From positions 316,344-380,343 of IMG/VR virus record IMGVR_UViG_3300030102_006934: DNA of 64,000 nt. One strand, written 5' to 3'. The notes below the pieces were generated by a model, which worked only from the letters and a program-made list of their open reading frames with translations, searched no databases and had not been told where the DNA came from. A program made the position numbers and the translations under genes. Position 1 is the first letter of the stretch. Every line of letters starts with the position of its first letter. Of this stretch, positions 12,391 to 60,974 are shown piece after piece.

Positions 12391-13839
12391 ATGAACATAA
12401 AAAGGGTTATACGAGAAGAGTTGAGTGACTTTGACTGGGTTGAAGAGATACCCAGTGTATTACCCAAAGATAGTGATTGGTGGATAATCAATGATGTTGA
12501 TCCCTATAGTTTAGAGGTAAGTGAAGAAATACAAGATTTTGTATTTAAACAAGGTTTTACTTGGATGTCGGGTCGGAAAAATTTCGTACCCAACAAGGTC
12601 GTAGCAATCTCACATCGAGGTGGAACATATGATCAACAATTAGGTAGATTTGGTTTTTACCGTCCATCTGACCATTCACCAAGTGACATAGAAAGATATG
12701 AAACAGGGAAAGATGACCTAGTTTATCGATGGAGTGAAATCGTTAAACCAATTAAAGAATCGGATGATATGGATTGGATTAGAGATATAAAACCAACAGA
12801 CCCAATCGGTGATTTCCTCATGAAAAAATTTCATGAGAAAATGGTTACTTATTTATCGTTGGGTGGTAGAAAAGGTGATGTTATTTCTAGGGAATGGGCT
12901 ACCGTTGAAGCTTTTTTAATTGAATTAAGGGAATTAAAAGAGAATGGCTTTGTTAATTTTTTAAGTAGGGTATTATTACAAAGTCATGTCGATAGACCTT
13001 ACCCACATGTCTTAAAGGCTATAGAAGACTCAGGTTTTGACGTTAATAAGTCAGAAGAAACCAAAAGACTTTATAAAATATTTCAGTCTTATAACTCTTT
13101 GGGTAATAGAATAAAAAGGACTTTAAAAAAAACTTTCATAAGAGAGAATGACCTAGATTGGATTGCTGGTGTTAGTAAAGACTATTGGGATTATTATGAT
13201 GCTGTGGTTTTCAAAAAAACATTGTTTGATGCTGAATTTAAGAAGTTTATTAACCAAGCCCTAAAATCCGTACAACCAACCAACGCTTCAGATTGGGAAG
13301 AAGATGATGAGATGAGTGATTTAGAGTACTTAAATTATAGGATTAGAAGACATGGCCAAGCTTTTATCGGAAAATACAGAGATGAAAAAGGTCGGAATGT
13401 TTTAGTTTTTGGTCAGGACCCAGATTATGAACTATACCCCCAAGTAAAGGATGCTAAAACTATAAATTACGAAGATATAAAAAAGGGGTTGTTCGAATCC
13501 AACGACTTTAGTTGGATCCAAGATATAGAACCACCGGTATTTAAACAACTAGATATTGCCACAAAAGATGATAATGATATAAACGTAAAGTGGGGTGATA
13601 ATGGGGATTTTAGTGAGGTGATAGATTCTAGTGGTCATAGGTATTTTAATCAAAGGGAATTAGGTTTATTTTTAGGTCTTTCTTATAGAAATTGGTCTGA
13701 AACTATTAATAATCTAGGGAAGTCAAATCTACTATTATATATAAAACACTTGATTGATTCTATAGAGTGGAGTTTACCAAGAGAACAGGAAGATTATGAT
13801 GATTTTATTAAATTATATAAAATAGTGGAAAAGTTATGA
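12391..13839 (+). CDS. Modular xE-DFDW polyprotein (4 modules)
   Basis: IREELSDFDWV, IKESDDMDWI, IRENDLDWI, LFESNDFSWI. Confidence 0.85.
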   Translation: MNIKRVIREELSDFDWVEEIPSVLPKDSDWWIINDVDPYSLEVSEEIQDFVFKQGFTWMSGRKNFVPNKVVAISHRGGTYDQQLGRFGFYRPSDHSPSDIERYETGKDDLVYRWSEIVKPIKESDDMDWIRDIKPTDPIGDFLMKKFHEKMVTYLSLGGRKGDVISREWATVEAFLIELRELKENGFVNFLSRVLLQSHVDRPYPHVLKAIEDSGFDVNKSEETKRLYKIFQSYNSLGNRIKRTLKKTFIRENDLDWIAGVSKDYWDYYDAVVFKKTLFDAEFKKFINQALKSVQPTNASDWEEDDEMSDLEYLNYRIRRHGQAFIGKYRDEKGRNVLVFGQDPDYELYPQVKDAKTINYEDIKKGLFESNDFSWIQDIEPPVFKQLDIATKDDNDINVKWGDNGDFSEVIDSSGHRYFNQRELGLFLGLSYRNWSETINNLGKSNLLLYIKHLIDSIEWSLPREQEDYDDFIKLYKIVEKL

Positions 13840-14366
13840 ACCTAAAAAAAATTATAAAAGAGGAATTAATTAAAGAATCTGGTGTAGAAAATTATCTACA
13901 ATCAATATCTAGTATAACTTCAGGTAATCAAAAAAAGTATTACCAATGGATTTTAGATAATCTAGAAAAAATTCCTGTTGTTAGTTATCGTTCTAACGAA
14001 GAACTAAAAGATAAAATAGATTCTTTTGTGGGAAAAATGAGACGCCGTGGTAGTTTTTGTGAAAAGAAAGGTTGTTTTGATACTGCCTATAATACAGCAA
14101 TGCATGTTCCTGGAGTTCATTATATAGAAGGTTATGTTCAATCCATGATACCTATTGTTCACGCATGGAATTATCTTCCAGAAGAAGGTATATATTTTGA
14201 TTTAATTAACGATATAGCTTGGGAAGAAGAAGATTCACACTTTAACGAATACTATAAGGTTATAGATTTAGATAAGTCAGGTGTGTTAAAATGGTCCATT
14301 GAAACTGGTTACGGTGGTGGATTCCTAGAAAGCCCAAAGTTTGTTAAACATATTTTAAAACAATAA
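13836..14366 (+). CDS. Leader-bearing protein, possible papain/transglutaminase-like fold
   Basis: MNLKKIIKEELIKE; KGCFDTA, YIEGYV, IVHAWN. Confidence 0.7.
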   Translation: MNLKKIIKEELIKESGVENYLQSISSITSGNQKKYYQWILDNLEKIPVVSYRSNEELKDKIDSFVGKMRRRGSFCEKKGCFDTAYNTAMHVPGVHYIEGYVQSMIPIVHAWNYLPEEGIYFDLINDIAWEEEDSHFNEYYKVIDLDKSGVLKWSIETGYGGGFLESPKFVKHILKQ

Positions 14367-14382
14367 TTAAATATTTATTATT

Positions 14383-15408
14383 ATGAACATCAAAAGAATT
14401 ATAAAAGAGGAGATGGATGACTTTGATTGGGTTAGAAATATAGAGGTTGATACTGATTTAACCCCTGCTCAACTTTACAATAGAATTAATGATTTACCAA
14501 ATGGTATAGTTGGCCCTTATGTCGGTGAAAACTTCGCTGATATTAAGTATGAGAATGGTAGGTACTATTTAATGGTTGATGATTTTTGTGATTTTAAAGA
14601 ATGGTTTAGTGATAGAGAAAACGGTTCTCAAGGTTATTATATGAATCAATGGGCTTTTACACAAGCTTTTTGTGGAGAAGATGATTTTTTTGAACCTTAT
14701 GGTGATTTGGTTTATGATTGGATTGACCAAGTATGGGAACTTGTTGCGGGGGATGAAAAATTATATAATTATGTAGTTGATTACATTACTGAAAACTTAG
14801 TTGGGGATGAGATGAGATTAGATAATGAGGAAAAAATATTAACTTTAGAAGATGTTCTTACTTGGTCAGCTGATTCAGATGTTTTAGGAATGGTTATAAA
14901 TGAACTAGATGTTTTTGAGGATTTAAAATGGGAATTAGAGAGATCTTACGAAAATGCTTATAATACATTTGTTGTTGATAATATGTATAAAGCAGGTAGG
15001 GATGCTATCACAGATGTTGTGGGTGATGGTGAAAGAAAAGATGTAGAACTTTATAATTCATACAGTAAATCCAATTACAACGCTAATAAATTAGTTTTTG
15101 ACGTGACGAGTATGTTGTCAGATTATCTTTATGAGGCTATTGAGTATTGTATAGATAATAGATGTAAACCTTATTGGAAACCAGAGAATTATGATTTTGA
15201 ATCGGAGGGTGAGACGGAAGAAGAAGCTTTTGAAGATTTTTGTCATGAGTGTATGAATTACCCCTTTGATGACCATGGGTCTTTCCTTTCTTTTATGAAA
15301 GAAATATTAGAAGAAAATGGGGACTTATTAAATCCTAGAGTCGATGATTACCCTAGTAACGATGAGATAGAAGATTATTTTATAGAAGACGTACATGGAA
15401 GATTCTAA
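14383..15408 (+). CDS. Acidic xE-DFDW family protein (paralog B1)
   Basis: ATATTTAT at 14371; MNIKRIIKEEMDDFDWV; similar to the C-terminal module of 15395-16759. Confidence 0.85.
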   Translation: MNIKRIIKEEMDDFDWVRNIEVDTDLTPAQLYNRINDLPNGIVGPYVGENFADIKYENGRYYLMVDDFCDFKEWFSDRENGSQGYYMNQWAFTQAFCGEDDFFEPYGDLVYDWIDQVWELVAGDEKLYNYVVDYITENLVGDEMRLDNEEKILTLEDVLTWSADSDVLGMVINELDVFEDLKWELERSYENAYNTFVVDNMYKAGRDAITDVVGDGERKDVELYNSYSKSNYNANKLVFDVTSMLSDYLYEAIEYCIDNRCKPYWKPENYDFESEGETEEEAFEDFCHECMNYPFDDHGSFLSFMKEILEENGDLLNPRVDDYPSNDEIEDYFIEDVHGRF

Positions 15409-16759
15409 AAAAACAAATTTAAAATTAATTATACGAGAAGAGTTGGATGACTTTGATTGGGTCAGAGACGTGAATACCAATCAAGATATCGCATTAGACA
15501 TTGTTAATAAAACTAAATTTTTTGTGTTAGACGGTAGTTTAAGGGTAGACCTACCTTTTATGAGTTATTATGAAGGTTATCCAGTGAAACAGTTATTTAA
15601 CTCCTCGTCATTACTTAAAAGTAATAGCCCTACTATTATGTTCCTTAATTACGTTAGCCAAAATCATGGGTTTGAAAGAACCGACTTCATGGCCAAATAT
15701 AACATAAACGCAAATGTACGTGATATATGGTTTAGGTATAAAAATTTAATGACACAAAAAGTTTTAGACAACCTTAAAGATAAACCAATTAACGAATCAG
15801 ATGACTTTGGTTGGGTTAGGGATATAAAGATTGATTATGATTTAACTCCTGCTCAGTTTTACCATAGGTATGAAGGTAATTTACCACTAAAATTTGTAGG
15901 ACCACTAATAGATAATGGATTTATTGATATAGACTATGATGGAGATGAACTTTATTTAAAATTGGAAGACGGTTGGTGTGATTTAAAATCACTTTTTACG
16001 GAACATGATACCAGTTCTTCTCAAGGAGCATACATTAACAAAAGTTTAGTTAATAATTTATATTGTGATGAGGATTACTTTGAACCATTCGATGGGATAG
16101 TTTATGATTGGGAAGATCAAGTTTGGGGCCTTATAACTCAAGATGATGAACTATATAAATACATAATAGACCATATAAACGAAAATATTGTGGGTTACCA
16201 AATGGATTTTGAGGGTGAACAAAGAACTCTAACTAAGGAAGATATTCTTGAATGGTCTGCCGACTCCGATGGGTTGGGTGAAGTCATCAATGACTTGAAT
16301 GTTTTTGAGGATTTAAAATGGGAATTAGAACTTTCTTATGAAAATGCTTATAACAATGTAATTAGAGATAATATTTACGAATCCGTTAGAAAAAGTGTTG
16401 AGGATTATCTTGGTCCGGCTGATTGGTATGGTAATGTTTTAACTTTTAAAGTAACTGAACCTCTTTTAGAACTTATAGGTAATGAAATTGGTGATTGTTG
16501 GGAAAACTGTAAACGACTTTGGGATCCAAAAGAATATGAAGATACTTATATGATGTTCAATAAAACCGAAGAAGAAGCTTTTGAGGAATACTGTGGTTCT
16601 TGTTTTGACCACCCATTTGATTCATATGGTTACTTTTTGGATTTCTTTAGTGAGTACTTATCTGAAGAAGGGGAATTACTAAACCCAAGGCTTGATGAAT
16701 TCGCGTCAGATGCTGAAATGTTACCATATTTTAAAGACGAGGTCTATTCTAGATTTTAA
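15395..16759 (+). CDS. Two-module xE-DFDW polyprotein (paralog B2)
   Basis: IIREELDDFDWV; INESDDFGWV. Confidence 0.85.
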   Translation: MEDSKKTNLKLIIREELDDFDWVRDVNTNQDIALDIVNKTKFFVLDGSLRVDLPFMSYYEGYPVKQLFNSSSLLKSNSPTIMFLNYVSQNHGFERTDFMAKYNINANVRDIWFRYKNLMTQKVLDNLKDKPINESDDFGWVRDIKIDYDLTPAQFYHRYEGNLPLKFVGPLIDNGFIDIDYDGDELYLKLEDGWCDLKSLFTEHDTSSSQGAYINKSLVNNLYCDEDYFEPFDGIVYDWEDQVWGLITQDDELYKYIIDHINENIVGYQMDFEGEQRTLTKEDILEWSADSDGLGEVINDLNVFEDLKWELELSYENAYNNVIRDNIYESVRKSVEDYLGPADWYGNVLTFKVTEPLLELIGNEIGDCWENCKRLWDPKEYEDTYMMFNKTEEEAFEEYCGSCFDHPFDSYGYFLDFFSEYLSEEGELLNPRLDEFASDAEMLPYFKDEVYSRF

Positions 16760-22334: not shown

Positions 22335-22829
22335 ATGAATATGAAAAAAAGAGTCGTAAAGTTTAATGAGTCGGATCTAGAAAAAATTGTTCAAAAAATA
22401 CTAAAGGAAGAGGGTGAAGAAAGAAGTTCACGTTATATGTTCTTTTCTAACTTAGAACAAATTCATAGACAAGCAGCCATGTTGTTAGAGATGGATGAAG
22501 ATATGTTGGAACAAATCTTAAATAACGGTCATGATTGGGCACAAGATCACATATCAGAAGCTAAAAATAACATGGACCAAGTATTTGATTTCATTATGAA
22601 TAAAATCAAAGAACCCCAAAACGTTTCTGTTGATGAGGGTAGTAATTTAAAAAATAATAACTTAATCTCAGAGAGTGGTAAAAACTGTGCAGACACAGAA
22701 AAGGGTTGTATTAGAAAAAGAAAGTCTGGTTGGGTTATTTTAAATAATAAAAAAGGTGGTGTTTGGAGAAAATGTGACTCCAAAAAACACTGTGAAGAAA
22801 TATTAGATGCGTTTCACGCTAGTAAGTAG
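22335..22829 (+). CDS. Leader-bearing protein with basic Cys-rich C-terminal module
   Basis: ATATTTAT at 22317; FNE-S, ILKEE, LISE-S sites. Confidence 0.8.
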   Translation: MNMKKRVVKFNESDLEKIVQKILKEEGEERSSRYMFFSNLEQIHRQAAMLLEMDEDMLEQILNNGHDWAQDHISEAKNNMDQVFDFIMNKIKEPQNVSVDEGSNLKNNNLISESGKNCADTEKGCIRKRKSGWVILNNKKGGVWRKCDSKKHCEEILDAFHASK

Positions 22830-23893: not shown

Positions 23894-24293
23894 AATAGAG
23901 TGCCCAATATGTGATTGGGATTGGGAATTAGAATCTGATGATGATAGACCTACATTATGTCATAAATGTGGATATGATTCGGATATAAAAGAGTTTGATA
24001 TGAAAGCTTTAAAAAAATGGGAAAAAGAAAACCAACTACCATTTCAAGAACAAAAAGAAGAAAGATATATAGTTAGAACTTTTTCCGAATCGACAGAGGA
24101 TACGGAATTGGTTTGGCATAGAGATAAGGAAGATAGGATAGTTAAAAGTTTAGGTAACACTGATTGGTCGATTCAATTGGATAATGAACTTCCTAGACCT
24201 TTAACAGAAATGATTTACATCCCTAAGAATAGTTACCATAGAGTTATTAAGGGTACGGGTGATTTAAAAGTGAGAATTAACAAATTATCATGA
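23874..24293 (+). CDS. Zn-ribbon plus cupin-like protein
   Basis: CPIC...CHKC; ELVWHRD...YHRVIKG. Confidence 0.7.
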   Translation: MVELGGKIECPICDWDWELESDDDRPTLCHKCGYDSDIKEFDMKALKKWEKENQLPFQEQKEERYIVRTFSESTEDTELVWHRDKEDRIVKSLGNTDWSIQLDNELPRPLTEMIYIPKNSYHRVIKGTGDLKVRINKLS

Positions 24294-25129
24294 AAACAAT
24301 AAATGAGGAAATAAATAGGATTAAACAGATAATGGGACTTCTAAATGAAGAAGGAAAACAGTATGGTACAATACTGATATTTGGACCTCAAGGTGTTGGT
24401 AAATCCACAATCACAAAACCATTAAGTAAAAAACTTGGGATGGAAGTTATTGGTACTGATGATTTTATTAATCAAGGTGACTGGCAAAGTCAAGAAACGA
24501 AAAAGAAAGGCTGGGAAAAAAGAAAAGAAAATGAGTTTACAGGTATGGTCAGTTTTTTAAAAAACAATTTAGGTAAACCAGTTATTTTAGATGTAGGTGG
24601 TAGTCATGGTGTGTGGGAAAAAGACCATTTAATAGAAATTATGAAATTAATATCAGATTATCCTAATAGATTTTTATTGTTACCCTCAAAAGATATGGGA
24701 AAATCAAAAGAATTTTTAAGACGTAATATGTTAAACAGAGAAAAAGGGATGGAAGGTGCTATTAAATACTGGGAAGCGTTATTAAAACAAGACGACAATT
24801 TCTCTAAAAACTTTAATGGTGAAGATAAAGTGGACTGGGACAAAAGAATGGAACGTGTAAAAAGTGGTGATGAAAGTGAAGCCAAATTTTGGATTAATAA
24901 AATGCAAACGAGACTAGATTTAATTAAGTCAGGAAAAGTAACATGGGATGAATTTGATATTAACGATGATAAAACTTTAATCAAAAAATCAGACCCCACC
25001 TATTTTGAAGATTATACTCAGTATTTCATAGAAAACATGAAAAAGTCTGGGATTGGGAATCATGTGATTTATAATTTAGGTAAAGAACAAGAATCATTAG
25101 TTGATGAAATAATAAGCAAATTAAAATAA
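24290..25129 (+). CDS. P-loop kinase (shikimate/nucleotide kinase-like) with leader
   Basis: GPQGVGKST, VILDVGG; leader MKTINEEINRIKQIMGLLNEE. Confidence 0.75.
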   Translation: MKTINEEINRIKQIMGLLNEEGKQYGTILIFGPQGVGKSTITKPLSKKLGMEVIGTDDFINQGDWQSQETKKKGWEKRKENEFTGMVSFLKNNLGKPVILDVGGSHGVWEKDHLIEIMKLISDYPNRFLLLPSKDMGKSKEFLRRNMLNREKGMEGAIKYWEALLKQDDNFSKNFNGEDKVDWDKRMERVKSGDESEAKFWINKMQTRLDLIKSGKVTWDEFDINDDKTLIKKSDPTYFEDYTQYFIENMKKSGIGNHVIYNLGKEQESLVDEIISKLK

Positions 25130-25554
25130 TGAAAAATTTAATTAAAAAAGTATTGAAGGAGTCGATTGGTGGTAATTATTTTTATTTAATAACTACTAAA
25201 GATGGTAAGTATTATTTCAACGAAGGTTATGAAACTTTTGATGCTAAACACGAATTAGTCCCACTAGATGGTACACTTGATTATGATGAGTTGGATAGAC
25301 TACATCAACCAAGTCGAGGAGGTGGTTATCTCTATCAATCAAGAGAAAGAGCTGAAAAATCTTTAAAAGCTAAAATAAAATGGTATGAAAAAATTAGAAC
25401 TGAAATGGAAGATGAGAATTATCAGCAGGATGAGTTTTTCGATAAACCAAGAAGAGCTTTGATTAATCAAATGGAGGACTTAGGTTATACATGGGATGAT
25501 TTAGAAGTTAAAGAATATTATTTAGGTTTAATACCAGCAACAACAAGTATATGA
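25129..25554 (+). CDS. Leader family hypothetical protein
   Basis: MKNLIKKVLKE-S. Confidence 0.75.
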   Translation: MKNLIKKVLKESIGGNYFYLITTKDGKYYFNEGYETFDAKHELVPLDGTLDYDELDRLHQPSRGGGYLYQSRERAEKSLKAKIKWYEKIRTEMEDENYQQDEFFDKPRRALINQMEDLGYTWDDLEVKEYYLGLIPATTSI

Positions 25555-25883
25555 AAAACTTAATTAGACATATATTATTAGAAGAAGCTAGTAAAGTAGA
25601 ATACCAAGTAAGGGATATTGGTGGTCCTACTTACTATAAACGCCATAAAGGAGAAAAATGGACTTTTACAGATGAAGTAGATTTTTTCAAAAACTCTAAT
25701 AGAAACAATCTAGTTAAATGGGTAGAAAAGAAGCCGAAAAAAGGACCATTCGTTAGACAAGTAGAGGTTCCCCAAGAAGATACTGATACTTTGAAATATT
25801 TAAAGGTATACTACCAAAATTTATCCCCTAATGATTATTCGGTGAAAATTCAAGGTGAAGAAATTATTATTAAAGCAAAATGA
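25551..25883 (+). CDS. Leader family hypothetical protein
   Basis: MKNLIRHILLEE. Confidence 0.75.
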   Translation: MKNLIRHILLEEASKVEYQVRDIGGPTYYKRHKGEKWTFTDEVDFFKNSNRNNLVKWVEKKPKKGPFVRQVEVPQEDTDTLKYLKVYYQNLSPNDYSVKIQGEEIIIKAK

Positions 25884-29877: not shown

Positions 29878-30444
29878 ATGAGAAAGTTAATTAAAAAGAT
29901 ATTGGTGGAATCTGATTGGGATTGGATTGAAAATGTTAAGTACGTAACATTGGAGTGGGGTGAAATACCAAAGAAAGGTGAAAAACTGATTTGTGTAGAT
30001 GGTTATATTAACACCGAAGAATTATCTTATTATATACAAGGTGCGGATGAAGATGTGTGTGATAAACTAAATGGGGGTCACGGATATTATCCAAAAAAAG
30101 AAATAATAGTAGAAAAAACTACTTTAGATGAGTGTACAAATGGTGGTAGTAGAGTCATAGTTTGGCCAAGAGTAACCCGAAGAATGCGTAATGAAAATGG
30201 TATTATGGGTGATGCGTTAGCGAGAATATCGACTCAACATAAAACGATTAATGAGTCTTACTTCGACTCCAATAAACTTTACAATAAAAGTTACATAGAC
30301 AGTGTTACCAAAAACGCTGATAGAAATATAAAACGAATTGTTAATAACCTAGAAGTGGTTAAATGTAAAGATAAAAATAATAACTCAACTGAGTGTGTTA
30401 GAATACCAGAAGTGGTATTTGTTTATATAAATGGTAGATATTAA
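29878..30444 (+). CDS. xE-DFDW family two-module protein
   Basis: ILVESDWDWI; internal INES. Confidence 0.8.
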   Translation: MRKLIKKILVESDWDWIENVKYVTLEWGEIPKKGEKLICVDGYINTEELSYYIQGADEDVCDKLNGGHGYYPKKEIIVEKTTLDECTNGGSRVIVWPRVTRRMRNENGIMGDALARISTQHKTINESYFDSNKLYNKSYIDSVTKNADRNIKRIVNNLEVVKCKDKNNNSTECVRIPEVVFVYINGRY

Positions 30445-30446
30445 AA

Positions 30447-47844: not shown

Positions 47845-48888
47845 ATGGATTCAGAAAAAAAAGAAGGTAAAGTTTCAAACGATTTTGATTGGGTAAAAGA
47901 TGTTAAAGCAAGACTACCTTTAAGAGTTGGTACTTGTTTAACTTTTAAACACTCAAAAGAGGAAGAAGAATGGGTAGAAGATGAATACGGTAACATGATT
48001 GACCACGGTAAAATGAACTGGCATATCACAAGTAAGTTTATAGATGTGTATAATGACGATAAACCAACCTTTTCAATGGTAGCCACAGATAGAATGGGTG
48101 AAAGTCGTCAAATTTTTATGGAAGTGGAAAAGGTTAAAGAATTGTATGAGGAAGGTGTTTATGAGCCTTGTAAAAAACAGCCATACCTAAAAAGAGTAAT
48201 GAAAGAAGAATCCGATGATTTTGATTGGGTTGAGGATGTTTCCAACACTTTACCCAGAAATGATAATTGGATGTTAATTAACGATGTAGACCCTGATTCT
48301 TTGGAAGTGTCTAAAGATATACAAAATTACCTATTCAGTAAGGGTTTGTTTTGGAATACAGGTAGAAAAACCCCATTGTATCAACGTATATTAGCGATAC
48401 ACTATGTCTTACCACACCGAATACATAGTGGTAGCTTTACCTACGTACCTAATAGTATACCTCATGAAAAAGCAAGATTAGAAGTTGAGTATGATAGGGA
48501 AGAACTTCTCAAAAAAGGAAAACATGTTTACTATTGGAGTCAATTAAAACCAGAAAAAGATAATATCAAAGAATCAAAAGATTTAAAATGGATCGAAGAT
48601 ATTGATTTTACAGACCCTAAAAAACCCAAACGTGGTTATGTTTATGATTGGAAGGGTTATAGTGATAGTGTTGCTAATTTAGGATATCAGTTAGGTGAAA
48701 TTGGGGATATTATAATTATTAAAGAACCATTTAGCAACCCAAGTCATAGGTACCCCAAGTGGAAGATGCATTACTTCGATACTTTAAATTTTGATTGGGG
48801 TGAAGAATTAGATGGTATTTCTGAAATTGAATTCAATAGAAAAATAGATGACGGTACCATAACCTACCTATACAAGTTAGGTCAATAA
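47845..48888 (+). CDS. Three-module xE-DFDW polyprotein
   Basis: NDFDWV, MKEESDDFDWV, IKESKDLKWI. Confidence 0.85.
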   Translation: MDSEKKEGKVSNDFDWVKDVKARLPLRVGTCLTFKHSKEEEEWVEDEYGNMIDHGKMNWHITSKFIDVYNDDKPTFSMVATDRMGESRQIFMEVEKVKELYEEGVYEPCKKQPYLKRVMKEESDDFDWVEDVSNTLPRNDNWMLINDVDPDSLEVSKDIQNYLFSKGLFWNTGRKTPLYQRILAIHYVLPHRIHSGSFTYVPNSIPHEKARLEVEYDREELLKKGKHVYYWSQLKPEKDNIKESKDLKWIEDIDFTDPKKPKRGYVYDWKGYSDSVANLGYQLGEIGDIIIIKEPFSNPSHRYPKWKMHYFDTLNFDWGEELDGISEIEFNRKIDDGTITYLYKLGQ

Positions 48889-52082: not shown

Positions 52083-52715
52083 ATGAGTATTAAAAAAATT
52101 ATAAGGGAAGAGTTAGAGTCAATGGTTTATTCGGATAAGATTAAGCCCAAACACAAAAAAAAGATGAGTCGTGAACTTAAGTTTTTTAAAGACTTCCCTA
52201 TTCGAAAATTTGCTAATATACCACCACCTAAAAACGAATCCATAGAAACTGAAGAAGAAATAGATTATTTAGAGAGTATACCAGTTAGTAAAAAATTTGT
52301 GGACGTGGCAGATGAATTCGAAGATTACTTTGGTGAATTTCTTAAAATTAGAGGATTAAAATACCCAAAGAAAGAATTATCAGAATTAATAGAAGAGACT
52401 AAAACAATAATTCTAAAATTAAAATACCACTATAACAGACCAAGACCATACCAAATAGCTAATGAAAAAAATATGTCTTTGAATTCTGAAGATTTAGCAT
52501 CAGCTAAAACACCCTCTTACCCATCTGGACACGCAACACAAGGTACTTTTATTAGTCGTTATTTAGCCGATTTATACCCAAAATACGAGAAAGAACTTTT
52601 AGACATGGGTGAGGATATCGCTTTTAGTAGAAATATGGCAAAAGTACATTACCCAAGTGACACTGAGTTAGGTAAAATACTTGGTAATGATTTGTATGAT
52701 TATCTAGGAAAATAG
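52083..52715 (+). CDS. PAP2/haloperoxidase-superfamily phosphatase with leader
   Basis: KYHYNRPRP, PSYPSGH, SRNMAKVHYPSD; leader MSIKKIIREELE; ATATTTAT at 52068. Confidence 0.85.
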   Translation: MSIKKIIREELESMVYSDKIKPKHKKKMSRELKFFKDFPIRKFANIPPPKNESIETEEEIDYLESIPVSKKFVDVADEFEDYFGEFLKIRGLKYPKKELSELIEETKTIILKLKYHYNRPRPYQIANEKNMSLNSEDLASAKTPSYPSGHATQGTFISRYLADLYPKYEKELLDMGEDIAFSRNMAKVHYPSDTELGKILGNDLYDYLGK

Positions 52716-52773: not shown

Positions 52774-54060
52774 ATGAACTTAAAAACCATCATTAAGTCA
52801 GAACTATTATTTGAATCTTTGGAAGATAGGTTAAAATCTGCCTATCGAAAATGGTGTAAAAAAATGAAATTAAAAGACCAAGACACCCTTGATGATATTA
52901 AGAATGCTGATGGTTATGTAGAAGAACTTGATGTATATGCAGAAGAATTTGAGGACCCTCACAGTAAAATGTACCAAAAAGTTGAAGAACTATACGCCAA
53001 GGAAGATTATGAAGGTATACATAATTTGATAGCTGACCACCAATGTAGGGATTTGTATATTGGTGCAGTATTTAAAGATTGGCTTTCTTATAGGAACCTA
53101 ACAAAAAGTTCAGATATATTCCAATATAAAAGTGAGAGAGAACTTGCGGGGGAGTTAGAGGACGCAAAAGAGAAATCATTTACCAAAAAGTTAAAGAAAG
53201 CTTCAGAGGGTGAAGATTTTGATAAAATTTGGGAGAATGATGATATGTTGATTGTTGTCCCTAAGTCACACGTTGGAGCTTGTAAATTTGGTCAGGGTAC
53301 TAAATGGTGTACCGCTAGTAAAACTGGTAATTACTTTGATCCTTATTATAAAAAAGGTATCTTATATAGGGTACTACAAAAAAATGATAATTATAAAGAA
53401 TTGTTCTCTAATTTTCAGATGAATAATAAGTTAGTCTCTGACATTGAAAACCTAAGTAAAGTCTCCATAAATCTAAGAAGAAAACAAGACTCTATGTCTA
53501 TGGTGGATAAAGTAGATTATGCTTTTGGAAATAAATCAACTTTAGAGTTTTTAAACTCCTTACCTAGTGAAGGTTATAAAGCCATTAAAAATTACCATAG
53601 TTTAAACGAACAAAGTATAAAAAATATTATAAGAGAAGAGTTGGATGACTTTGATTGGGTTAAAAATACTAACCCAATTCCAAATGAAATTTTAGACATA
53701 AGTAAGTACCGAGATGGGAATTATAAATTTTGGTTGGGAGATATATCAAAAGAAACTCAACTACAAATATTGGATTATATAAGTGAGGTGATTAGGGGTG
53801 ACGATAATTTACATACCAATGGTACATTGTATGAAGTTCGTAAAAGGGTGGATAAAAATTTAGTCTCTATTAATTCACTTTTTTTTGAGATTAAACAGGT
53901 TGGCTTAAAAAAAGGAATAAATTTATCAATAATGGGTTGGTACCCAAATGACCCACATTTTGAAAGAGAAGAAAGATTAGAATATTGTAGAAATTATTTT
54001 TATCAAACGGATGATATAAATTTGTCTGATGTAGATTTGGGGGAACAAAATAAAATTTGA
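52774..54060 (+). CDS. Family A domain fused to an xE-DFDW module
   Basis: ACKFGQGTKWC; internal SIKNIIREELDDFDWV. Confidence 0.85.
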   Translation: MNLKTIIKSELLFESLEDRLKSAYRKWCKKMKLKDQDTLDDIKNADGYVEELDVYAEEFEDPHSKMYQKVEELYAKEDYEGIHNLIADHQCRDLYIGAVFKDWLSYRNLTKSSDIFQYKSERELAGELEDAKEKSFTKKLKKASEGEDFDKIWENDDMLIVVPKSHVGACKFGQGTKWCTASKTGNYFDPYYKKGILYRVLQKNDNYKELFSNFQMNNKLVSDIENLSKVSINLRRKQDSMSMVDKVDYAFGNKSTLEFLNSLPSEGYKAIKNYHSLNEQSIKNIIREELDDFDWVKNTNPIPNEILDISKYRDGNYKFWLGDISKETQLQILDYISEVIRGDDNLHTNGTLYEVRKRVDKNLVSINSLFFEIKQVGLKKGINLSIMGWYPNDPHFEREERLEYCRNYFYQTDDINLSDVDLGEQNKI

Positions 54061-54183: not shown

Positions 54184-54564
54184 ATGAAGAAAATAATAAA
54201 AAGAATTTTAAGAGAAGAATTCAATGATTTTGATTGGATTAAGGACACTGGTGGTGATAAATATGTCCCTATAAGAGTTATTCTCAATAAGCTTGATGAG
54301 ACTTATTATGGGGAAAATCCTAATGAAATTCTAGAATACGAAAATGTTTTCAAAGTACCATTAGAAGATTTTGTGAGAATTACAAATAGTACGAATTATA
54401 CAGACGAGGAATATGAGATTATTACCCCAATAGGTCATAATTTACTTAATTATGCTTATGATTGTGAACTTAATCCATTTGTTTGTAAAGAAATTGATGA
54501 TTTTTTCGATACGGAGGTTGACGAATATATTGAGGGTATAGTATTATTGGATGATAATTTTTAA
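54184..54564 (+). CDS. xE-DFDW family protein
   Basis: ATATTTAT at 54172; ILREEFNDFDWI. Confidence 0.8.
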   Translation: MKKIIKRILREEFNDFDWIKDTGGDKYVPIRVILNKLDETYYGENPNEILEYENVFKVPLEDFVRITNSTNYTDEEYEIITPIGHNLLNYAYDCELNPFVCKEIDDFFDTEVDEYIEGIVLLDDNF

Positions 54565-54571: not shown

Positions 54572-57157
54572 ATGAGAGTTTTAATAAATAAAATATTAAA
54601 AGAGTTACATAGTAAAAGTATTATTAAAAAAGTACTTAATGAAAATTACCAGGACGAAAATATATCACAAGAAGAAAAAAATAGTATCATTGATGAGTAT
54701 GGGTGGTTAAAAAATGAAGAAAAAATTGAAAGTATTTTAAAAAACCCGCCTTTTTCAAAGAAAACTAGGACCTATAGAATAGTTAATAGCTATAGGGTTA
54801 GGTATATTATATCTAAGGAAATAAAAAAAAATGTATATTTTAATAACGCGGGTTGGGCTAACTTTGTAAAGAAGGTGGGTCAAGTAATAGGCTTAAAAAT
54901 AAAAGCAACAGATGATACCGTTTCAAAATTCTTTAAAAATATCGATGAGACCAAAAAATATGGTTTAGAGGGGAAACATTTAGAAGATAGAAAAAATACT
55001 TCCACGGAGTTAAAAAAGAATTGGAATAAAATAGACCCTGAAGTATACGAAGAAAGAATAGAACATACTATTAATTATTTAAAAAATACCAATATTACAG
55101 AATTGGAAAATTCAAAGACAAGCTTATTGACACGGTTTTCTTTAATACTAAGATACCAAGAAGAAATAATGAACTATCTTATTGATTATTTTAAAGATGA
55201 CCCAAAAATAAGGTTTTATCTTAGTTATCTTAATAAAGGTGGAAAATATTGGGGTACACTTGTAAAATACCAAAAAAAACTAAGTAATGTGCTAGACAAC
55301 CCTAATATTAGTGAAAAATATGATGACATTGTAGAAATGAAAAAATCATATAAGGCTATTATTGAAGAAGAAGCACCTTATTTGTTTAACGAAAAGGGTA
55401 ATTTTACTAAAAAAGAAAAGGAAATATTAGTAAATTGGTTTAATTTAACAAGTTATGAACATTCTTTCACAGAATTAGGGTTTTATAAACCAGAAGGAAA
55501 AGGTGCGGAGTCTTTAATACATAATCTACACAGTGCAGGTATTAGATACAATGTTAGTAATGAAATAAAAAATAATACTGATACTGATGACGTTGTAAAA
55601 TTTGTGATAAACAATATTATTAATTATTTAAAAAACACAAAAGATATAATTAAATACGATATTGTTAGTAAAGATACTATAAAAGATATTAATGGAAATG
55701 AAGTGATTCCAAAGGGTAGTAAAATAGAGGTTAAAGACATTAAGAATAGTGATAGTTATTTTGCTGAATTTTTATCATCACCTGTTAAAAGCGGTTCAGA
55801 AATATTGAATAATGAAGTTTATAGAGGAAGGTATAATAAAATAATAGAAGGAATTTATAATTGGTTATCTAACGATAGTGTGGGTATGGGTATTAAAAAT
55901 ACTATTAAGTGGTTAATGACTAACGATTTAGAAGGTATAATAATATCTAATAATATCTATGTCCCTAATAAAGATGGTAACATTGAATTTTATTTATCTA
56001 ATATTGGTCAAAACAACCCAAAAAATCATATAAGAATTACAATAAGATATAATATTAATTTAGATAAATCGAAAAATTTCTATAAAATAGGAGATGGTAA
56101 GTGGAAATTAAACGGTAAAGCATCCAAAAAAGGTATTCTTTACCCACTACCAGAAACAGAAAGTAATTTAATAAGACCCATAGAGAAACAAATTTATAAA
56201 ACAATAGAAGAATCTAAGACTAAATCTACAATAAATAAAATATTAAAAGAAGAATTCGATGATTTCGATTGGATTAAGGACACTTTTACCGAACTAAACA
56301 AAAGTGAAAAATGGATGTTGGTTAATGATATAGACCGTGAGAGTATATCGGAAGGTCATGAAATACAAAAATATCTATTTGACTTGGGTTATAGTTGGGG
56401 TACTGGTGATTTAAAAAATTCACTAAAAGATTTTTGTATCTATACAATATATCATTTCGGAAATATTAGAAATGATGAACACTTATATTACGGAGATGGT
56501 TGTAGAAGTGCTGATATAAGAATTTCAGATAAAGATATTAAAAGTGGTGAACATATAGTTTATTATTGGAGTGAGTTAAAACCTAAAACAATAAAGGAAG
56601 AAAACGATTTTAAATGGATTGATGAACCAAGAAACAACCCATTAGATGGTTTAAGATTAACAACACCTATGGGTAGAGCTGGTAGTGGTGGTAGTGGTTT
56701 AACAATAAAAGACGATGGTGGTACATATGTTACTGTTACCTCTTCTAACGGTTCTAGTGAATATCATAGGGGTACTGTTAAAAACTTTATAAGAATGGGT
56801 ATTTGGTTACCAATAGATTCTATGAATGAATCAGATGATTTTGATTGGGCGAAAGAAATAAAACCAACGTTGAATGTTGCCTTTGAAGAAGGTCTGATTA
56901 AAGCGGGTGATATTTTGACACTTTCTGGGGAACTAATGGATGATGAAGGAAGACACACAATACAAGTTTCAGATTTTAAAATAAAAATAGATCAAATATA
57001 TGGGCCTAATAGTGTATATAGAGACATCACCAGTTCTCTTTTCATACCACTACAAGAAAAATATTTCAAACACTTAGGTTATTATGAAAATGAATTTAAT
57101 GATTCTATCAGATTTGCTAAGAAAGATGGTGAGTTAGAAATATTAGATATATCTTAA
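54572..57157 (+). CDS. 861-aa modular xE-DFDW polyprotein
   Basis: Large module homologous to module 2 of 42891; ILKEEFDDFDWI, IKEENDFKWI, MNESDDFDWA. Confidence 0.9.
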   Translation: MRVLINKILKELHSKSIIKKVLNENYQDENISQEEKNSIIDEYGWLKNEEKIESILKNPPFSKKTRTYRIVNSYRVRYIISKEIKKNVYFNNAGWANFVKKVGQVIGLKIKATDDTVSKFFKNIDETKKYGLEGKHLEDRKNTSTELKKNWNKIDPEVYEERIEHTINYLKNTNITELENSKTSLLTRFSLILRYQEEIMNYLIDYFKDDPKIRFYLSYLNKGGKYWGTLVKYQKKLSNVLDNPNISEKYDDIVEMKKSYKAIIEEEAPYLFNEKGNFTKKEKEILVNWFNLTSYEHSFTELGFYKPEGKGAESLIHNLHSAGIRYNVSNEIKNNTDTDDVVKFVINNIINYLKNTKDIIKYDIVSKDTIKDINGNEVIPKGSKIEVKDIKNSDSYFAEFLSSPVKSGSEILNNEVYRGRYNKIIEGIYNWLSNDSVGMGIKNTIKWLMTNDLEGIIISNNIYVPNKDGNIEFYLSNIGQNNPKNHIRITIRYNINLDKSKNFYKIGDGKWKLNGKASKKGILYPLPETESNLIRPIEKQIYKTIEESKTKSTINKILKEEFDDFDWIKDTFTELNKSEKWMLVNDIDRESISEGHEIQKYLFDLGYSWGTGDLKNSLKDFCIYTIYHFGNIRNDEHLYYGDGCRSADIRISDKDIKSGEHIVYYWSELKPKTIKEENDFKWIDEPRNNPLDGLRLTTPMGRAGSGGSGLTIKDDGGTYVTVTSSNGSSEYHRGTVKNFIRMGIWLPIDSMNESDDFDWAKEIKPTLNVAFEEGLIKAGDILTLSGELMDDEGRHTIQVSDFKIKIDQIYGPNSVYRDITSSLFIPLQEKYFKHLGYYENEFNDSIRFAKKDGELEILDIS

Positions 57158-59481: not shown

Positions 59482-59499
59482 ACCAAAACAAAGAAGATA

Positions 59500-59598: not shown

Positions 59599-59616
59599 CT
59601 AAAAACATAAACAAAG

Positions 59617-60004: not shown

Positions 60005-60077
60005 AGACTTTGATAAGTGGGAAGAAAGAGCAAAGAAAAACACAGAAATCATTGAGCAACAACAAACCAAAACAAAG

Positions 60078-60176
60078 ATGGGTAAAGAAGAAAATACGGG
60101 TTGTTTTGAAACATGGTTAGGAATCGTAGTCTTTTCCATAATAATGATATTAATAATGATGATAAACGAATATTAG
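60078..60176 (+). CDS. 32-aa single-TM peptide, copy 1
   Basis: MGKEENTGCFETWLGIVVFSIIMILIMMINEY; near-duplicate of 62922-63014. Confidence 0.7.
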   Translation: MGKEENTGCFETWLGIVVFSIIMILIMMINEY

Positions 60177-60218
60177 TGAATACAAGGTATTTTTTATACT
60201 TAGATAATATTTATTAAT

Positions 60219-60974
60219 ATGAGAAAGATGGGTAGAATAACCGAAAAAGATATCAGTAGACTTATTAGTATTATAAGAGAAAATAATGAATTAAAGTCTG
60301 ATAATCAAGATTGGGGTTGGTTTGATCGATTTGGTTTTGGTAAAGGGGATTATACAGAAGAAAAAACTCAAAAAGAACTAGAGTCTCTTAGATGGAAAAA
60401 TGTTAAAAGTGGTGATGTATTAATAATACACCCAGATGATAGAACAACCGATTTTCTTAAACCGACTTATTCTGACTTGGATGCTACTATTCTAACACAA
60501 TCTAATGAATTCTTTAATCTAGCGGAAACCATGAAAAGACATAATAGAATTATTATGATGGGCCATGGTTCACCAAGTGGTTTATTTATGCCAAAAGTAG
60601 AGGGTATAGAAGAAGATGAAAATGGTGAGTTATTCGAGTACACTGATTACGCAATCAACAACTCATACGCTGATATTTTAAGAGAAAAACGTACTGTATG
60701 TGTTTGGTGTAATGCTGATAGATATGTTGTACCTAATGATTTACATGGTTTTTACACAGGGATGGCTATTTCAGAACTTTGTGAAGCCGATTATTGTGAT
60801 GTTAAAGGGTGTAACCCAAAACAACTAGAAGAATCAAATACTAAGTTTACAATGGGTTTAAAAGAATCGTTAAAAGTAGATGGACCAGGTTCTGTAAATA
60901 TCTTCAAAGAAATTTATAATAACCCAGAAAACCCTATCATGGTCTATAATAGAAAAAGACTTTATTATAGATAA
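60219..60974 (+). CDS. Leader-bearing protein, possible His-Cys dyad peptidase fold
   Basis: ATATTTAT at 60207; IIRE; IIMMGHGS and CVWCNA. Confidence 0.7.
   Translation: MRKMGRITEKDISRLISIIRENNELKSDNQDWGWFDRFGFGKGDYTEEKTQKELESLRWKNVKSGDVLIIHPDDRTTDFLKPTYSDLDATILTQSNEFFNLAETMKRHNRIIMMGHGSPSGLFMPKVEGIEEDENGELFEYTDYAINNSYADILREKRTVCVWCNADRYVVPNDLHGFYTGMAISELCEADYCDVKGCNPKQLEESNTKFTMGLKESLKVDGPGSVNIFKEIYNNPENPIMVYNRKRLYYR

What the first reader, a model, noticed from the sequence alone, without database searches (positions are those of the whole stretch)
13836..60974. Recognisable enzymes carry the putative packaging leader
Seen: leaders on a P-loop kinase (24290), PAP2 phosphatase (52083), GP88-like domain (25880), two HExxH proteins (30772, 36575), a Cys/His papain-like candidate (13836) and a His-Cys candidate (60219). 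Homologous enzymes do not normally have such extensions. Inference: a pre-made enzymatic payload injected with the genome to act before or against host defences, and evidence that the leader is a portable tag.
Basis: partly seen in the sequence, partly recalled or inferred. Interest (0 to 1): 0.6.

Follow-up and report, generated by a model that had tools for sequence, protein, structure and literature searches.

The report
Capsid-targeting-like leader and cleavable junction cassette
A 380-kb uncultured phage with a T4-type head-assembly module puts one short N-terminal tag, ending in the head protease's cutting motif, on about 30 unrelated proteins and repeats that motif between modules of giant proteins, which suggests (untested) that it loads many proteins into its capsid.

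Summary
The leader is real, but the finding is only partly right. The window is the last 64 kb of a 380,343-bp virus genome. Its portal, gp21-type prohead protease, scaffold and gp23-type capsid protein are T4-like.

- **Extent.** A profile finds the leader (M-x-x-Φ-Φ-K-K-Φ-Φ-[KR]-E-E) on 28 of 461 called genes, 14 of them in the window. A related 345-kb genome has none.
- **The seven named genes.** Three carry the canonical leader: 13836, GP88 at 25880 and PAP2 at 52083. The kinase has a different, orthologue-conserved leader. 60219 is marginal. 30772 and 36575 are not significant.
- **Enzyme calls.** Kinase, PAP2 (class A acid phosphatase fold, Z 17.9) and GP88 hold. The HExxH, papain-like and His-Cys calls have no family support.
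- **New point.** The leader ends in Φ-x-E. That is the T4 gp21 cleavage motif, and it is conserved at this clade's capsid-protein maturation site. It is the N-terminal form of a junction, Φ-x-E-[S/E]-x-DFDW-Φ-[KR]-D-Φ, which also recurs inside multi-module ORFs. 456 protein clusters worldwide carry this junction, with up to 12 copies per protein.

Best reading (about 0.6): these are T4-CTS-like propeptides and polyprotein junctions cut by the prohead protease. Packaging and injection remain untested.

The parts
12391..13839 (+). Leader A plus DFDW junction at the N-terminus. A second, internal junction lies at residue 254 (nt ~13150).
   Evidence: Leader profile E 1.9e-8; junction list.
13836..14366 (+). 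Leader A without DFDW (variant IIKEELIKESG). The body is of unknown function; the 'papain-like' call is not supported.
   Evidence: E 5.6e-5; no Pfam, PHROG or PDB hit; only a weak YunG-like lead at 0.85.
14383..15408 (+). Leader A, junction, then a 320-aa body with four invariant Cys and no known fold. ATATTTAT motif directly upstream.
   Evidence: E 3e-8. Orthologues are either stand-alone with a leader or fused behind an internal junction. AF2 pLDDT 88, but below 50 for residues 1-20. No Foldseek match.
15395..16759 (+). Longer N-terminus, then leader A plus junction at residue 19. Paralogue of 14383 (44% identity over 318 aa).
22335..22829 (+). Long leader form (class B: V-K-F-N-E-S-D-L-x-x-I-V-x-K-I-L-K-E-E). 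ATATTTAT motif upstream.
   Evidence: Class B profile built from relatives only, E 1.1e-7; motif.
24290..25129 (+). P-loop kinase with a class C leader (INRIKQIMGLLNEE) in front of the Walker A strand.
   Evidence: Pfam SKI, AAA_18 and AAA_33 profiles start at residues 28-35. The leader is conserved in orthologues. Class C profile E 1.3e-9.
25129..25554 (+). Leader A (MKNLIKKVLKE) on a 141-aa ORFan.
   Evidence: E 0.0026; no Pfam hit.
25551..25883 (+). Leader A-like N-terminus (MKNLIRHILLEE) on a 110-aa ORFan.
   Evidence: Member of the 34-member N-terminal cluster.
25880..27568 (+). Leader A (with Arg at the usual Glu position), an acidic ~60-aa extension, then GP88 and Phage_L5_gp82 domains.
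   Evidence: E 2.5e-4; Pfam GP88 1.7e-33 at residues 69-290 and L5_gp82 1.6e-28; the annotated cyanophage homologue starts at about query residue 60.
29113..30782 (+). Three consecutive ORFs (29113-29877, 29878-30444, 30447-30782), each with leader A plus a DFDW-type junction.
30772..31473 (+). HEIEH at residue 123. The N-terminus MMNKKDILLE has Φ-x-E but no significant leader match.
36575..37804 (+). HEIKH at residue 247. The N-terminus (IIKHFLTEVGG) resembles the variant leader of the post-protease ORF, but not significantly. ATATTTAT motif 5 nt upstream.
   Evidence: (LPD23/LPD1 leads at 0.85-0.89 only).
42894..47627 (+). 1,577-aa multi-module ORF: leader plus junction at the N-terminus, and six internal junctions at residues 829, 957, 1195, 1287, 1381 and 1485 (32-aa junction segments at nt 45342-45437, 45726-45821, 46440-46535, 46716-46811, 46998-47093 and 47310-47405).
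   Evidence: no Pfam hit.
47845..48888 (+). DFDW at residue 13 behind an atypical N-terminus, and an internal junction at residue 125 (32-aa junction segment nt 48181-48276).
52083..52715 (+). Leader A on a class A acid phosphatase (PAP2). The catalytic motifs K114..R121-P122, P147-S-G-H150 and R183..H189..D193 are invariant in the 51-sequence alignment. ATATTTAT motif upstream.
   Evidence: E 1.4e-5; Pfam PAP2; alignment A1; AF2 pLDDT 95; VIA-align Z 17.9 to 1eoi over model residues 29-210.
52774..54060 (+). Fusion of two modules. There is a leader-like N-terminus and a complete internal leader plus junction at residue ~282-296 (32-aa junction segment nt 53611-53706). The C-terminal module is homologous to a stand-alone leader gene at G000 100503-100946.
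54184..54564 (+). Leader A plus junction on a 126-aa ORFan. ATATTTAT motif upstream.
   Evidence: E 2.2e-8.
54572..57157 (+). 861-aa multi-module ORF: leader A at the N-terminus and internal junctions at residues 564 and 756 (32-aa junction segments nt 56225-56320 and 56801-56896). The first internal junction is preceded by a full leader-like helix.
60219..60974 (+). Marginal long-form leader (RITEKDISRLISIIRENNE) followed by DWGWF. The 'His-Cys enzyme' call is not supported. ATATTTAT motif upstream.
   Evidence: Class B profile E 0.038.

Best explanation
The leader is a T4-CTS-like propeptide. It is a 10-13-residue amphipathic N-terminal helix that ends in Φ-x-E, the motif after which gp21-family prohead proteases cut.

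**Proposed mechanism.**
1. During head assembly the helix docks the protein onto the scaffolding core. The helix resembles the scaffold's own N-terminus in this clade, as the T4 CTS resembles gp22's.
2. The capsid shell closes around the core.
3. The protease removes the tag.

The same cut site, extended on its C-terminal side by DFDW-Φ-[KR]-D-Φ, also separates modules inside ORFs of up to 1,577 aa. Those ORFs are therefore predicted polyproteins, released as separate pieces inside the head.

**Cargo.** It would include a class A acid phosphatase, a GP88/gp82 protein and a lysozyme-domain protein. Via another leader class it would also include a P-loop kinase.

**Shown here:** the motif, its portability, its position outside the folds, the T4-type head module, and conservation of Φ-x-E at the capsid-protein maturation site.

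**Inferred:** targeting, cleavage, packaging and injection.
For: **T4-type head module.**
- Peptidase_S77 protease at 99 bits and Gp23 capsid protein at 209 bits in the same genome.
- TerL, portal, protease and capsid protein by PHROGs.
- phmmer to T4 gp20, gp21 and gp23 at E 1e-24 to 1e-29.

**Protease chemistry and specificity look conserved.**
- The NHP, G-[VI]-S-S-R-G and D-x-V-x-x-P-S blocks and the N-terminal L-[IV]-E align with T4 gp21.
- The T4 gp23 cleavage site FLTE|A aligns with L-[IL]-[NTS]-E|[AST] in all 80 clade capsid proteins.
- The scaffold is 2.9-fold enriched in Φ-x-E-small sites.

**Leader and junction carry that motif.**
- The leader ends in I/L-[KR]-E. The Glu is at least 90% conserved across 19 window junctions.
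- 45 of 49 DFDW motifs in the genome have Φ-x-E 0-5 residues upstream, against 16% at random positions.
- In 149 proteins from elsewhere the figure is 480 of 514, with the same 16% control.

**Gene position.** The two ORFs between protease and scaffold carry leaders: G000 152592 has class B and 152917 has class A. Their orthologues in close relatives keep them.

**T4 precedent.**
- ipII/ipIII MKTYQEFIAE, Alt MELITELFDE, gp24 MAKINELLRE and gp22 MLKEQLIAEAQ.
- CTS function and processing determinants at residues 8 and 10 (PMC9026906 section 2.6; PMC3012670).

**Portability and linear-motif behaviour:**

**Cargo that fits a virion role.** A leader-plus-junction protein ends in a T4-type lysozyme domain. 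An unrelated metagenome contig has the same arrangement, beside four more leader ORFs.

**Promoter.** ATATTTAT lies no more than 40 nt upstream of the TerL, portal, protease, sheath, tube and adaptor genes. It also precedes 12 of 28 leader genes, against 72 of 433 others (p 0.0016).
Against: - There are no virion, proteomic or biochemical data. The phage is uncultured.
- The leader has no significant sequence similarity to the T4 CTS; only length, helicity and the Φ-x-E ending match.
- A complete relative with the same protease and capsid protein (61% MCP identity) has no such leader family, so the system is not a clade-wide requirement.
- GP88's leader has Arg at the expected Glu, and 47845 lacks Φ-x-E before its first DFDW.
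- After the predicted cut, DFDW would stay on the mature protein. T4 has no counterpart, and this is unexplained.
- The median junction spacing of 112 aa would also fit a divergent repeat-domain family.
- The PAP2 leader helix is modelled with pLDDT ~80, so contact with the domain is not excluded.
- At operon level the promoter association is not significant (p 0.08).
- T4 gp55, gp45, gp44, gp43, gp46 and gp47 find nothing by phmmer. Only the head module is demonstrably T4-like.
Confidence: 0.6

Rival explanations
1. Domain-boundary signature of one very divergent ~110-aa repeat family. On this reading DFDW-Φ-[KR]-D-Φ-x-P is the conserved first strand of each repeat, and Φ-x-E-S is the end of the preceding repeat. 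The N-terminal leader is a stand-in for a missing upstream repeat. Nothing is cleaved.
For: Junction spacing is fairly uniform in the global set: median 112 aa, interquartile range 96-131. Some modules are detectably homologous, with clusters of 2-7.
Against: - Segment lengths in this genome range from 66 to 808 aa, and 29 of 51 segments have no BLAST relative.
- The leader also sits on proteins with no DFDW and with known folds, such as PAP2 and GP88.
- In the 14383 model the invariant W16 region has pLDDT below 50 and is not packed into the confidently folded body.
- The Glu with a hydrophobic residue two positions before it matches the capsid-protein maturation site.
Confidence: 0.15
2. An address or docking tag for something other than the prohead. 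Candidates are a tail or baseplate assembly platform, the membrane, a replication compartment, or a common phage or host hub protein. The amphipathic helix would do the binding, and the Φ-x-E would be incidental.
For: The leader is a short K/E-rich amphipathic helix, a shape used by many binding motifs. It is portable and lies outside the folds. The complete relative G001 lacks it, although it has the same head proteins.
Against: - Leader ORFs sit between the protease and the scaffold.
- The near-invariant Glu and the P3 hydrophobic residue match the protease motif.
- The leader resembles the scaffold N-terminus.
- The thymidine kinase, LOG-family, CCA-type nucleotidyltransferase and HD-domain genes in the window lack it.
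Confidence: 0.12
3. A nucleic-acid-level cassette. On this reading a promoter plus start region was copied with genes during recombination, or an A-rich start region is kept for efficient translation, and the peptide is only a by-product.
For: A conserved ATATTTAT motif lies 4-18 nt upstream of many leader genes. The genome is 31% GC.
Against: - Synonymous codons vary at the rate expected from genome usage: 0.586 identical, against 0.37-0.69 expected per amino acid.
- More than half of the leader genes lack the motif.
- The same peptide motif recurs inside ORFs, far from any start.
- Orthologues keep the peptide while the DNA diverges.
Confidence: 0.03
4. A compositional coincidence: Lys, Ile and Glu-rich N-termini are common in AT-rich genomes.
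For: N-termini starting MKK are frequent in such genomes.
Against: The control genome, of similar GC (33%) and size, gives no N-terminal cluster larger than 3, against 34 here. The N-terminal versus internal bias and the profile E-values down to 3e-9 also argue against chance.
Confidence: 0.02

Closest known systems
T4 capsid targeting sequence (CTS) of internal proteins IPI-III and Alt, cut by prohead protease gp21
   Same: Both are 10-19-residue N-terminal propeptides ending in Φ-x-E. Both sit on otherwise unrelated proteins. In both cases the phage has a gp21-family protease, a gp22-like acidic scaffold and a gp23-family capsid protein. In both, the tag resembles the scaffold's N-terminus (PMC9026906, PMC3012670).
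   Different: - There is no sequence similarity to the T4 CTS.
- About 28-45 tagged genes here, against a handful in T4.
- The cut site carries a conserved downstream DFDW-Φ-[KR]-D-Φ element.
- The site is reused inside ORFs as an inter-module junction.
- The cargo includes a class A acid phosphatase and a kinase.
- Nothing has been shown experimentally.
Propeptides of ejection and inner-body proteins of giant phages phiKZ, 201phi2-1 and SPN3US
   Same: These are jumbo genomes with many head-internal proteins, often paralogous. Their proteins are processed after Glu by a gp21-related protease, and paralogues have conserved N-termini reminiscent of CTSs (PMC5694885).
   Different: Those phages cut at [S/A/G]-x-E and mostly have propeptides longer than 100 residues. 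No repeated junction cassette or tandem polyprotein architecture is described for them.
Polyvalent proteins of phages and conjugative elements (Iyer et al. 2017, PMC5512222)
   Same: They are large multi-domain proteins thought to be packaged and delivered with the DNA. Their domains also occur as solo genes, and proteolytic release of the domains has been proposed.
   Different: Their release is ascribed to peptidase domains carried within the proteins, not to a repeated linear junction recognised by the head protease. Almost none of the modules here match their domains; there are only weak LPD23/LPD1 leads for 36575.
Bacterial class A non-specific acid phosphatases (PhoN, PhoC, E. blattae enzyme)
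   Same: The fold matches (Z 16.6-17.9 over ~173 residues), and all three PAP2 signature motifs are invariant.
   Different: The solved bacterial enzymes align only from about residue 26-31 of the phage protein. From general knowledge, not tested here, those enzymes are exported by a Sec signal peptide. The phage version has the leader helix plus a conserved ~15-residue segment at that end.

Membership tests
T4-type capsid targeting sequence (CTS) propeptide | Short (10-19 aa) N-terminal extension on otherwise unrelated proteins | tested here: met
   28 genes by profile; 22 of 37 bodies are unrelated; folds start after the tag.
T4-type capsid targeting sequence (CTS) propeptide | Ends in the prohead protease cleavage motif (hydrophobic-x-Glu) | tested here: met
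   The Glu is at least 90% conserved with Φ at P3. The same motif is at the capsid-protein site aligned to the known T4 gp23 site.
T4-type capsid targeting sequence (CTS) propeptide | The phage encodes a gp21-family protease and a scaffolding core | tested here: met
   Peptidase_S77 at 99 bits; catalytic blocks conserved; acidic 412-aa scaffold upstream of the capsid protein with 78 orthologues.
T4-type capsid targeting sequence (CTS) propeptide | Sequence similarity to the T4 CTS (MKTYQEFIAE) | tested here: not met
   Side-by-side reading of the T4 N-termini and the leader shows only a shared format. No alignment score was computed. The leader is therefore an analogue or a very distant relative.
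T4-type capsid targeting sequence (CTS) propeptide | Sufficient to carry a foreign protein into proheads, and removed in mature virions | not testable with these tools
   This needs virion mass spectrometry or fusion experiments. The complex prediction for protease plus leader gave no verdict.
Polyvalent proteins (Iyer et al. 2017) | 2-15 effector-type domains in one phage polypeptide, with the domains also found solo | tested here: inconclusive
   The multi-module layout and the solo/fused interchange are met. The modules do not match the described domains.
PAP2 / class A acid phosphatase (52083) | KX6RP, PSGH and SRX5HX3D motifs, and the helical fold | tested here: met
   Invariant K114, R121, P122, P147, S148, G149, H150, R183, H189 and D193. 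Z 17.9 to 1eoi. Pfam 39.7 bits, above the 27.2 cut-off.
P-loop nucleotide/shikimate-type kinase (24290) | Walker A motif and a kinase-family profile above its cut-off | tested here: met
   GPQGVGKST at residues 32-40. SKI 27.6 bits, above the 22.1 cut-off. The substrate is unknown.
Zincin (HExxH) metallopeptidase (30772, 36575) | HExxH in a zincin fold with a third metal ligand | tested here: inconclusive
   The HExxH motif is present, but there is no family, PDB or related-locus support. Neither protein was folded.
Papain-like cysteine peptidase (13836) and His-Cys enzyme (60219) | Catalytic Cys/His in a recognisable peptidase family | tested here: not met
   No Pfam, PHROG or PDB match. The nearest named atlas clusters for 13836 are YunG-like, at 0.85 only.

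The most novel reading that the evidence does not exclude
A modular 'cargo cassette' system. Diverse ~100-aa modules and whole enzymes would be written into the genome either as solo genes with a 12-residue leader, or strung together as polyproteins with up to 12 junctions. Every unit would be bounded by the same Φ-x-E|[S/E]-x-DFDW-Φ-[KR]-D-Φ site. The T4-type prohead protease would cut these sites inside the capsid, so that dozens of different proteins are loaded and later injected with the DNA. DFDW, which stays on each mature piece, would have a function of its own, such as a capsid or DNA anchor, or an exit signal.
Probability: 0.35. Interest if true: 0.8.

Novelty: new variant of a known kind. 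Interest (0 to 1): 0.62.

Why it matters
If the reading is right, T4's capsid-targeting trick has been scaled up in an abundant group of uncultured jumbo phages. At least 598 IMG/VR contigs share the capsid protein, and the host is probably a member of the Bacteroidota.

Three things would follow:
- One tag and one cleavable junction would define a whole injected proteome from sequence alone. That gives a direct list of candidate early-acting and counter-defence proteins to test.
- The junction would be a compact, sequence-defined protease site. It could also become a new packaging tag for phage-based protein delivery, as the T4 CTS already is.
- Giant phage ORFs of unknown function could be read as polyproteins and split at predictable positions.

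If the reading is wrong, the junction is still an unexplained, strongly conserved linear motif found in 456 protein clusters.

Tried and rejected
- **Complex prediction.** Protease plus the first 45 residues of 14383 scored 0.00 and gave no verdict. This counts neither for nor against binding.
- **Named ORFans against PDB sequences.** 13836, 30772, 36575 and 60219 gave nothing usable.
- **Protein-atlas look-alikes.** 36575 and 13836 gave only sub-threshold leads: LPD23/LPD1 and YunG-like.
- **IMG/VR relatives of 36575.** None were found, so no alignment or fold was made for it.
- **Foldseek of the 14383 model.** No match.
- **PHROGs and Pfam on most leader proteins.** Empty.
- **Megablast of 24 kb of the window against cultured phages.** No match.
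- **A head-proximal leader protein of relatives (L038) against cultured phages.** Only short, uninformative hits.
- **T4 gp55, gp45, gp44, gp43, gp46 and gp47 by phmmer against the called genes.** No hits. I therefore call only the head module T4-like, and the 'late promoter' label for ATATTTAT rests on the genes it precedes.
- **Operon-level promoter association.** Not significant (p 0.08). Only the direct association is significant (p 0.0016).
- The first degenerate DNA pattern had too few specified bases and was corrected once.
- **Rejected explanations.** A DNA-level cassette (codon analysis), a compositional artefact (control genome) and a single paralogous family.
- **Not used.** The sequencing-run and read-laying tools, because expression data would not show packaging.

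Full report
**Setting.** The window is the last 64 kb (G000:C1:316344-380343) of a single 380,343-bp virus record. The genome is 31% GC. CheckV rates it complete, and no terminal repeats were found. It encodes a T4-type head module:
- large terminase, portal, head maturation protease and major head protein by PHROGs;
- Pfam Peptidase_S77 at 99 bits and Gp23 at 209 bits;
- direct phmmer hits from T4 gp20, gp21 and gp23 at E 1e-24 to 1e-29.

T4 replication and late-transcription proteins found nothing by the same simple search, so I call only the head module T4-like. The capsid protein has at least 598 relatives in IMG/VR at 60-83% identity. The nearest cultured relatives are only ~42% identical: Flavobacterium phage immuto and a Microcystis phage. 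A window gene for an M43 peptidase carries a type IX secretion sorting domain, which points to a Bacteroidota host.

**Is the leader real?** Yes.
- Reading the N-termini of all window ORFs shows the recurring M-x-x-Φ-Φ-K-K-Φ-Φ-[KR]-E-E, often followed by DFDW[VI].
- An iterated profile finds 28 of 461 called genes at E<=0.01, 14 of them in the window.
- Unbiased pairwise scoring of the first 20 residues of every gene gives one cluster of 34 here. In a complete 345-kb relative (33% GC, 61% capsid-protein identity) no cluster exceeds 3.
- That genome is both a compositional control and evidence that the family is lineage-specific. Close relatives (81-83% capsid-protein identity) do share it.
- Conservation is at the protein level. 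Identical residues use identical codons 58.6% of the time, as expected from genome-wide codon usage.

**The seven named genes.**
- Three carry the canonical leader: 13836, 25880 and 52083.
- The kinase (24290) carries a different leader, NLQENIxRIKxxMGLLxEE. It is conserved in almost all listed orthologue clusters and scores E 1.3e-9 against a profile built from them.
- 60219 matches a long leader form only marginally (E 0.038). That form is [IV]-x-[IL]-[TN]-E-S-[DQ]-L-x-x-[LI]-V-K-K-I-I-R-E-E, and it is also present on window gene 22335 and on two head-module ORFs.
- 30772 and 36575 are not significant.
- Enzyme identities hold for the kinase, PAP2 and GP88/L5-gp82.
- The two HExxH motifs exist but have no family support. 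The papain-like and His-Cys ideas have none either.

**Is the leader an add-on?** Yes, by four tests.
1. Behind the leader, 22 of 37 proteins have no BLAST relative among the others.
2. In the PAP2 family (584 clusters) the body from M-V-Y-S..K-P-K-H-x-K-K-M onward is conserved, while the first ~12 residues differ between lineages. Variants include MSIKKIIREE, MDNLIKKIVEE and MIKLKELL. One relative has the kinase-type leader instead.
3. The AF2 model of PAP2 (pLDDT 95) superposes on class A acid phosphatases at Z 17.9 from model residue 29 onward. So the tag and ~15 further residues lie outside the fold shared with the bacterial enzymes. From general knowledge, not tested here, those enzymes carry a Sec signal peptide at that end.
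4. In the model of 14383 (pLDDT 88) residues 1-20 are below pLDDT 50, although W16 is invariant and E10 and D12 are nearly so across 30 homologues. That is the behaviour of a linear motif.

In addition, the kinase Pfam profiles begin at residues 28-35, and a cyanophage GP88 homologue starts at about residue 60.

DFDW is not part of the leader only.
- It recurs inside ORFs: six times in the 1,577-aa window ORF 42894-47627, twice in 54572-57157, once each in 12391, 47845 and 52774, and repeatedly in three large ORFs elsewhere in the genome.
- Each copy is preceded by Φ-[N/K]-E-[S/E]. 45 of 49 motifs have Φ-x-E ending 0-5 residues upstream, against 16% at random positions in the same proteins.
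- The N-terminal leader is therefore the shortest possible 'upstream piece' of a junction: Φ-x-E-[S/E]-x-D-F-D-W-[VI]-[KR]-D-[VI]-x-P.
- Orthologues of the 14383 body show this directly. The same module is found either as M-N-I-K-R-I-I-K-E-E-M-D-DFDWV... or fused behind another module as ...P-I-N-E-S-D-DFDWV....
- Window ORF 52774-54060 is such a fusion. Its second half, including a full internal leader, is homologous to a stand-alone gene elsewhere in the genome.
- Segments between junctions range from 66 to 808 aa and mostly show no similarity to each other.
- A 32-residue profile of 19 window junctions finds 456 cluster representatives at E<=1e-3 among 1.84 billion proteins, 70 of them at <=1e-10, with up to 12 matched stretches per protein.
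- In the best 149 of those there are 514 junctions, 93% with Φ-x-E upstream (control 16%). Median spacing is 112 residues, and in 120 of 148 proteins the first junction lies within 30 residues of the start.
- An exact degenerate DNA pattern for DFDWV-[KRNHQS]-D-[VIM] finds only 13 IMG/VR stretches. Several are orthologues of genes in this genome, and a few belong to another lineage with a different 16-residue leader ending L-E-E.

**Why a prohead-protease site is the best reading.**
- T4 gp21 removes 7-65-residue N-terminal propeptides from head proteins. The 10-residue CTS of IPIII suffices to carry foreign proteins into proheads, and residues 8 and 10 (I-x-E) govern its processing (PMC9026906 section 2.6; PMC3012670; PMC5694885).
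- From the T4 record: ipII/ipIII start MKTYQEFIAE, Alt MELITELFDE, gp24 MAKINELLRE and gp22 MLKEQLIAEAQ.
- The protease here keeps the NHP, G-[VI]-S-S-R-G and D-x-V-x-x-P-S blocks and an N-terminal L-[IV]-E like T4's LIE-9.
- The T4 gp23 maturation site FLTE|AEIG aligns with L-[IL]-[NTS]-E|[AST]-T in all 80 clade capsid proteins. That is essentially the junction's [IL]-[LI]-N-E|S.
- The conserved acidic scaffold is 2.9-fold enriched in Φ-x-E-small sites. Its N-terminus, K-K-S-I-I-E-E-A-L-L-E-A, resembles the leader, just as gp22's N-terminus resembles the T4 CTS.
- The two ORFs between the protease and the scaffold carry leaders.
- A leader-plus-junction protein elsewhere in the genome ends in a T4-type lysozyme domain. 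An independent metagenome contig has the same arrangement, next to four more leader ORFs and a 12-junction ORF. A lysozyme that carries a virion-entry tag makes biological sense.
- ATATTTAT(A) lies within 40 nt upstream of the terminase, portal, protease, sheath, tube and adaptor genes. It directly precedes 12 of 28 leader genes against 72 of 433 others (p 0.0016). At operon level the difference is not significant (p 0.08).

**What remains open.**
- Nothing shows cleavage, packaging or injection.
- The leader is not similar in sequence to the T4 CTS.
- DFDW would remain on the mature pieces, and its role is unknown.
- The fairly uniform spacing in the global set keeps a repeat-domain reading alive.
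- A relative with the same head proteins lacks the family.
- The protease-leader complex prediction gave no verdict.

I put 0.6 on the propeptide/polyprotein reading. The rivals get 0.15 (uncleaved domain-boundary motif), 0.12 (tag for another destination) and 0.05 or less (nucleic-acid cassette or compositional artefact).

**Verdict.** This is a new variant of a known kind: a T4-type capsid-targeting propeptide, expanded to about 30 genes and generalised into a reusable junction.

Noticed in passing
Genome-wide; in the window upstream of 14383, 22335, 36575, 42894, 52083, 52774, 54184 and 60219: The 8-mer ATATTTAT (usually followed by A) occurs 123 times on the + strand, against ~62 expected. 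84-87 copies lie within 40 nt upstream of a gene start, including the terminase, portal, protease, tail sheath, tail tube and adaptor genes. It is probably the phage's late promoter; its core TATTTATA is close to the T4 late promoter TATAAATA, which I recall from general knowledge.
   Followed up: partly
window 1642-5273 and 34610-34682: Eight tRNA genes (Glu, Asp, Ser, Met, Leu, Arg, Ala, Gly), seven of them clustered beside an HD-domain gene and a CCA-type nucleotidyltransferase gene.
   Followed up: no
window 50616-51842: A signal-peptide protein with a Peptidase_M43 domain and a type IX secretion C-terminal sorting domain (Por_Secre_tail). This is a Bacteroidota-specific export signal inside a phage genome, and so a hint to the host.
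   Followed up: no
window 52774-54060: A single ORF made of two leader-bearing modules, with a complete internal leader plus junction at residues ~282-296. The second module is homologous to the stand-alone gene at G000 100503-100946.
   Followed up: yes
G000 158962-161241 and 71859-73444; similar N-terminus at window 60987-61295: A further family of shared N-termini, M-R-R-F-D-K-R-x-x-I-x-E-A-N-x-R-L-E-R-E-Y-I, on five otherwise different proteins. Three of them lie just downstream of the capsid gene, and the family also occurs next to the capsid gene in several relatives.
   Followed up: partly
L016 490-2340 (IMG/VR relative): The prohead protease of one relative carries a ~370-residue insertion directly in front of the catalytic N-H-P block. 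It looks like an intein with a homing-endonuclease part.
   Followed up: no
window 8759-10189 (-), 27648-29111 (+); G000 125380-126924: Three paralogues share L-L-E-G-R-x-E-D-V-x-x-K-Y...D-P-S-G-N-N-K-Y-L-x-W-M. Only the copy outside the window starts with the canonical leader, so the tag is present or absent among paralogues.
   Followed up: no
T4 record NC_000866 (L008, L089) compared with G000 154338-155576: The N-terminus of T4 scaffold gp22 (MLKEQLIAEAQ) resembles the T4 CTS (MKTYQEFIAEA). The same relation holds between this clade's scaffold N-terminus and its leader. This suggests that such tags work by mimicking the scaffold's own N-terminal helix.
   Followed up: partly
window 14383-15408: The body behind the leader has four invariant cysteines (C256, C261, C287, C290) and many invariant acidic and aromatic residues. 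It is modelled with confidence (pLDDT 88) but has no Foldseek match in the PDB, so it may be a new fold.
   Followed up: partly
window 22832-23893: This ORF has a leader-like start (MEIKEIILEELFLE), then a poly-Lys run and a conserved-looking D-A-C-Y-H-K-V-K-S-R-Y-D-V-W-P-S-A-Y-A-S-G-A-L-V-K-C-R-K segment. There is no Pfam match.
   Followed up: no
G000 138362-140242: A 626-aa ORF with two internal junctions and a weak match (E 4.5e-4, below the cut-off) to a poly(A)-polymerase-like nucleotidyltransferase palm domain. It is a possible further enzyme module.
   Followed up: no
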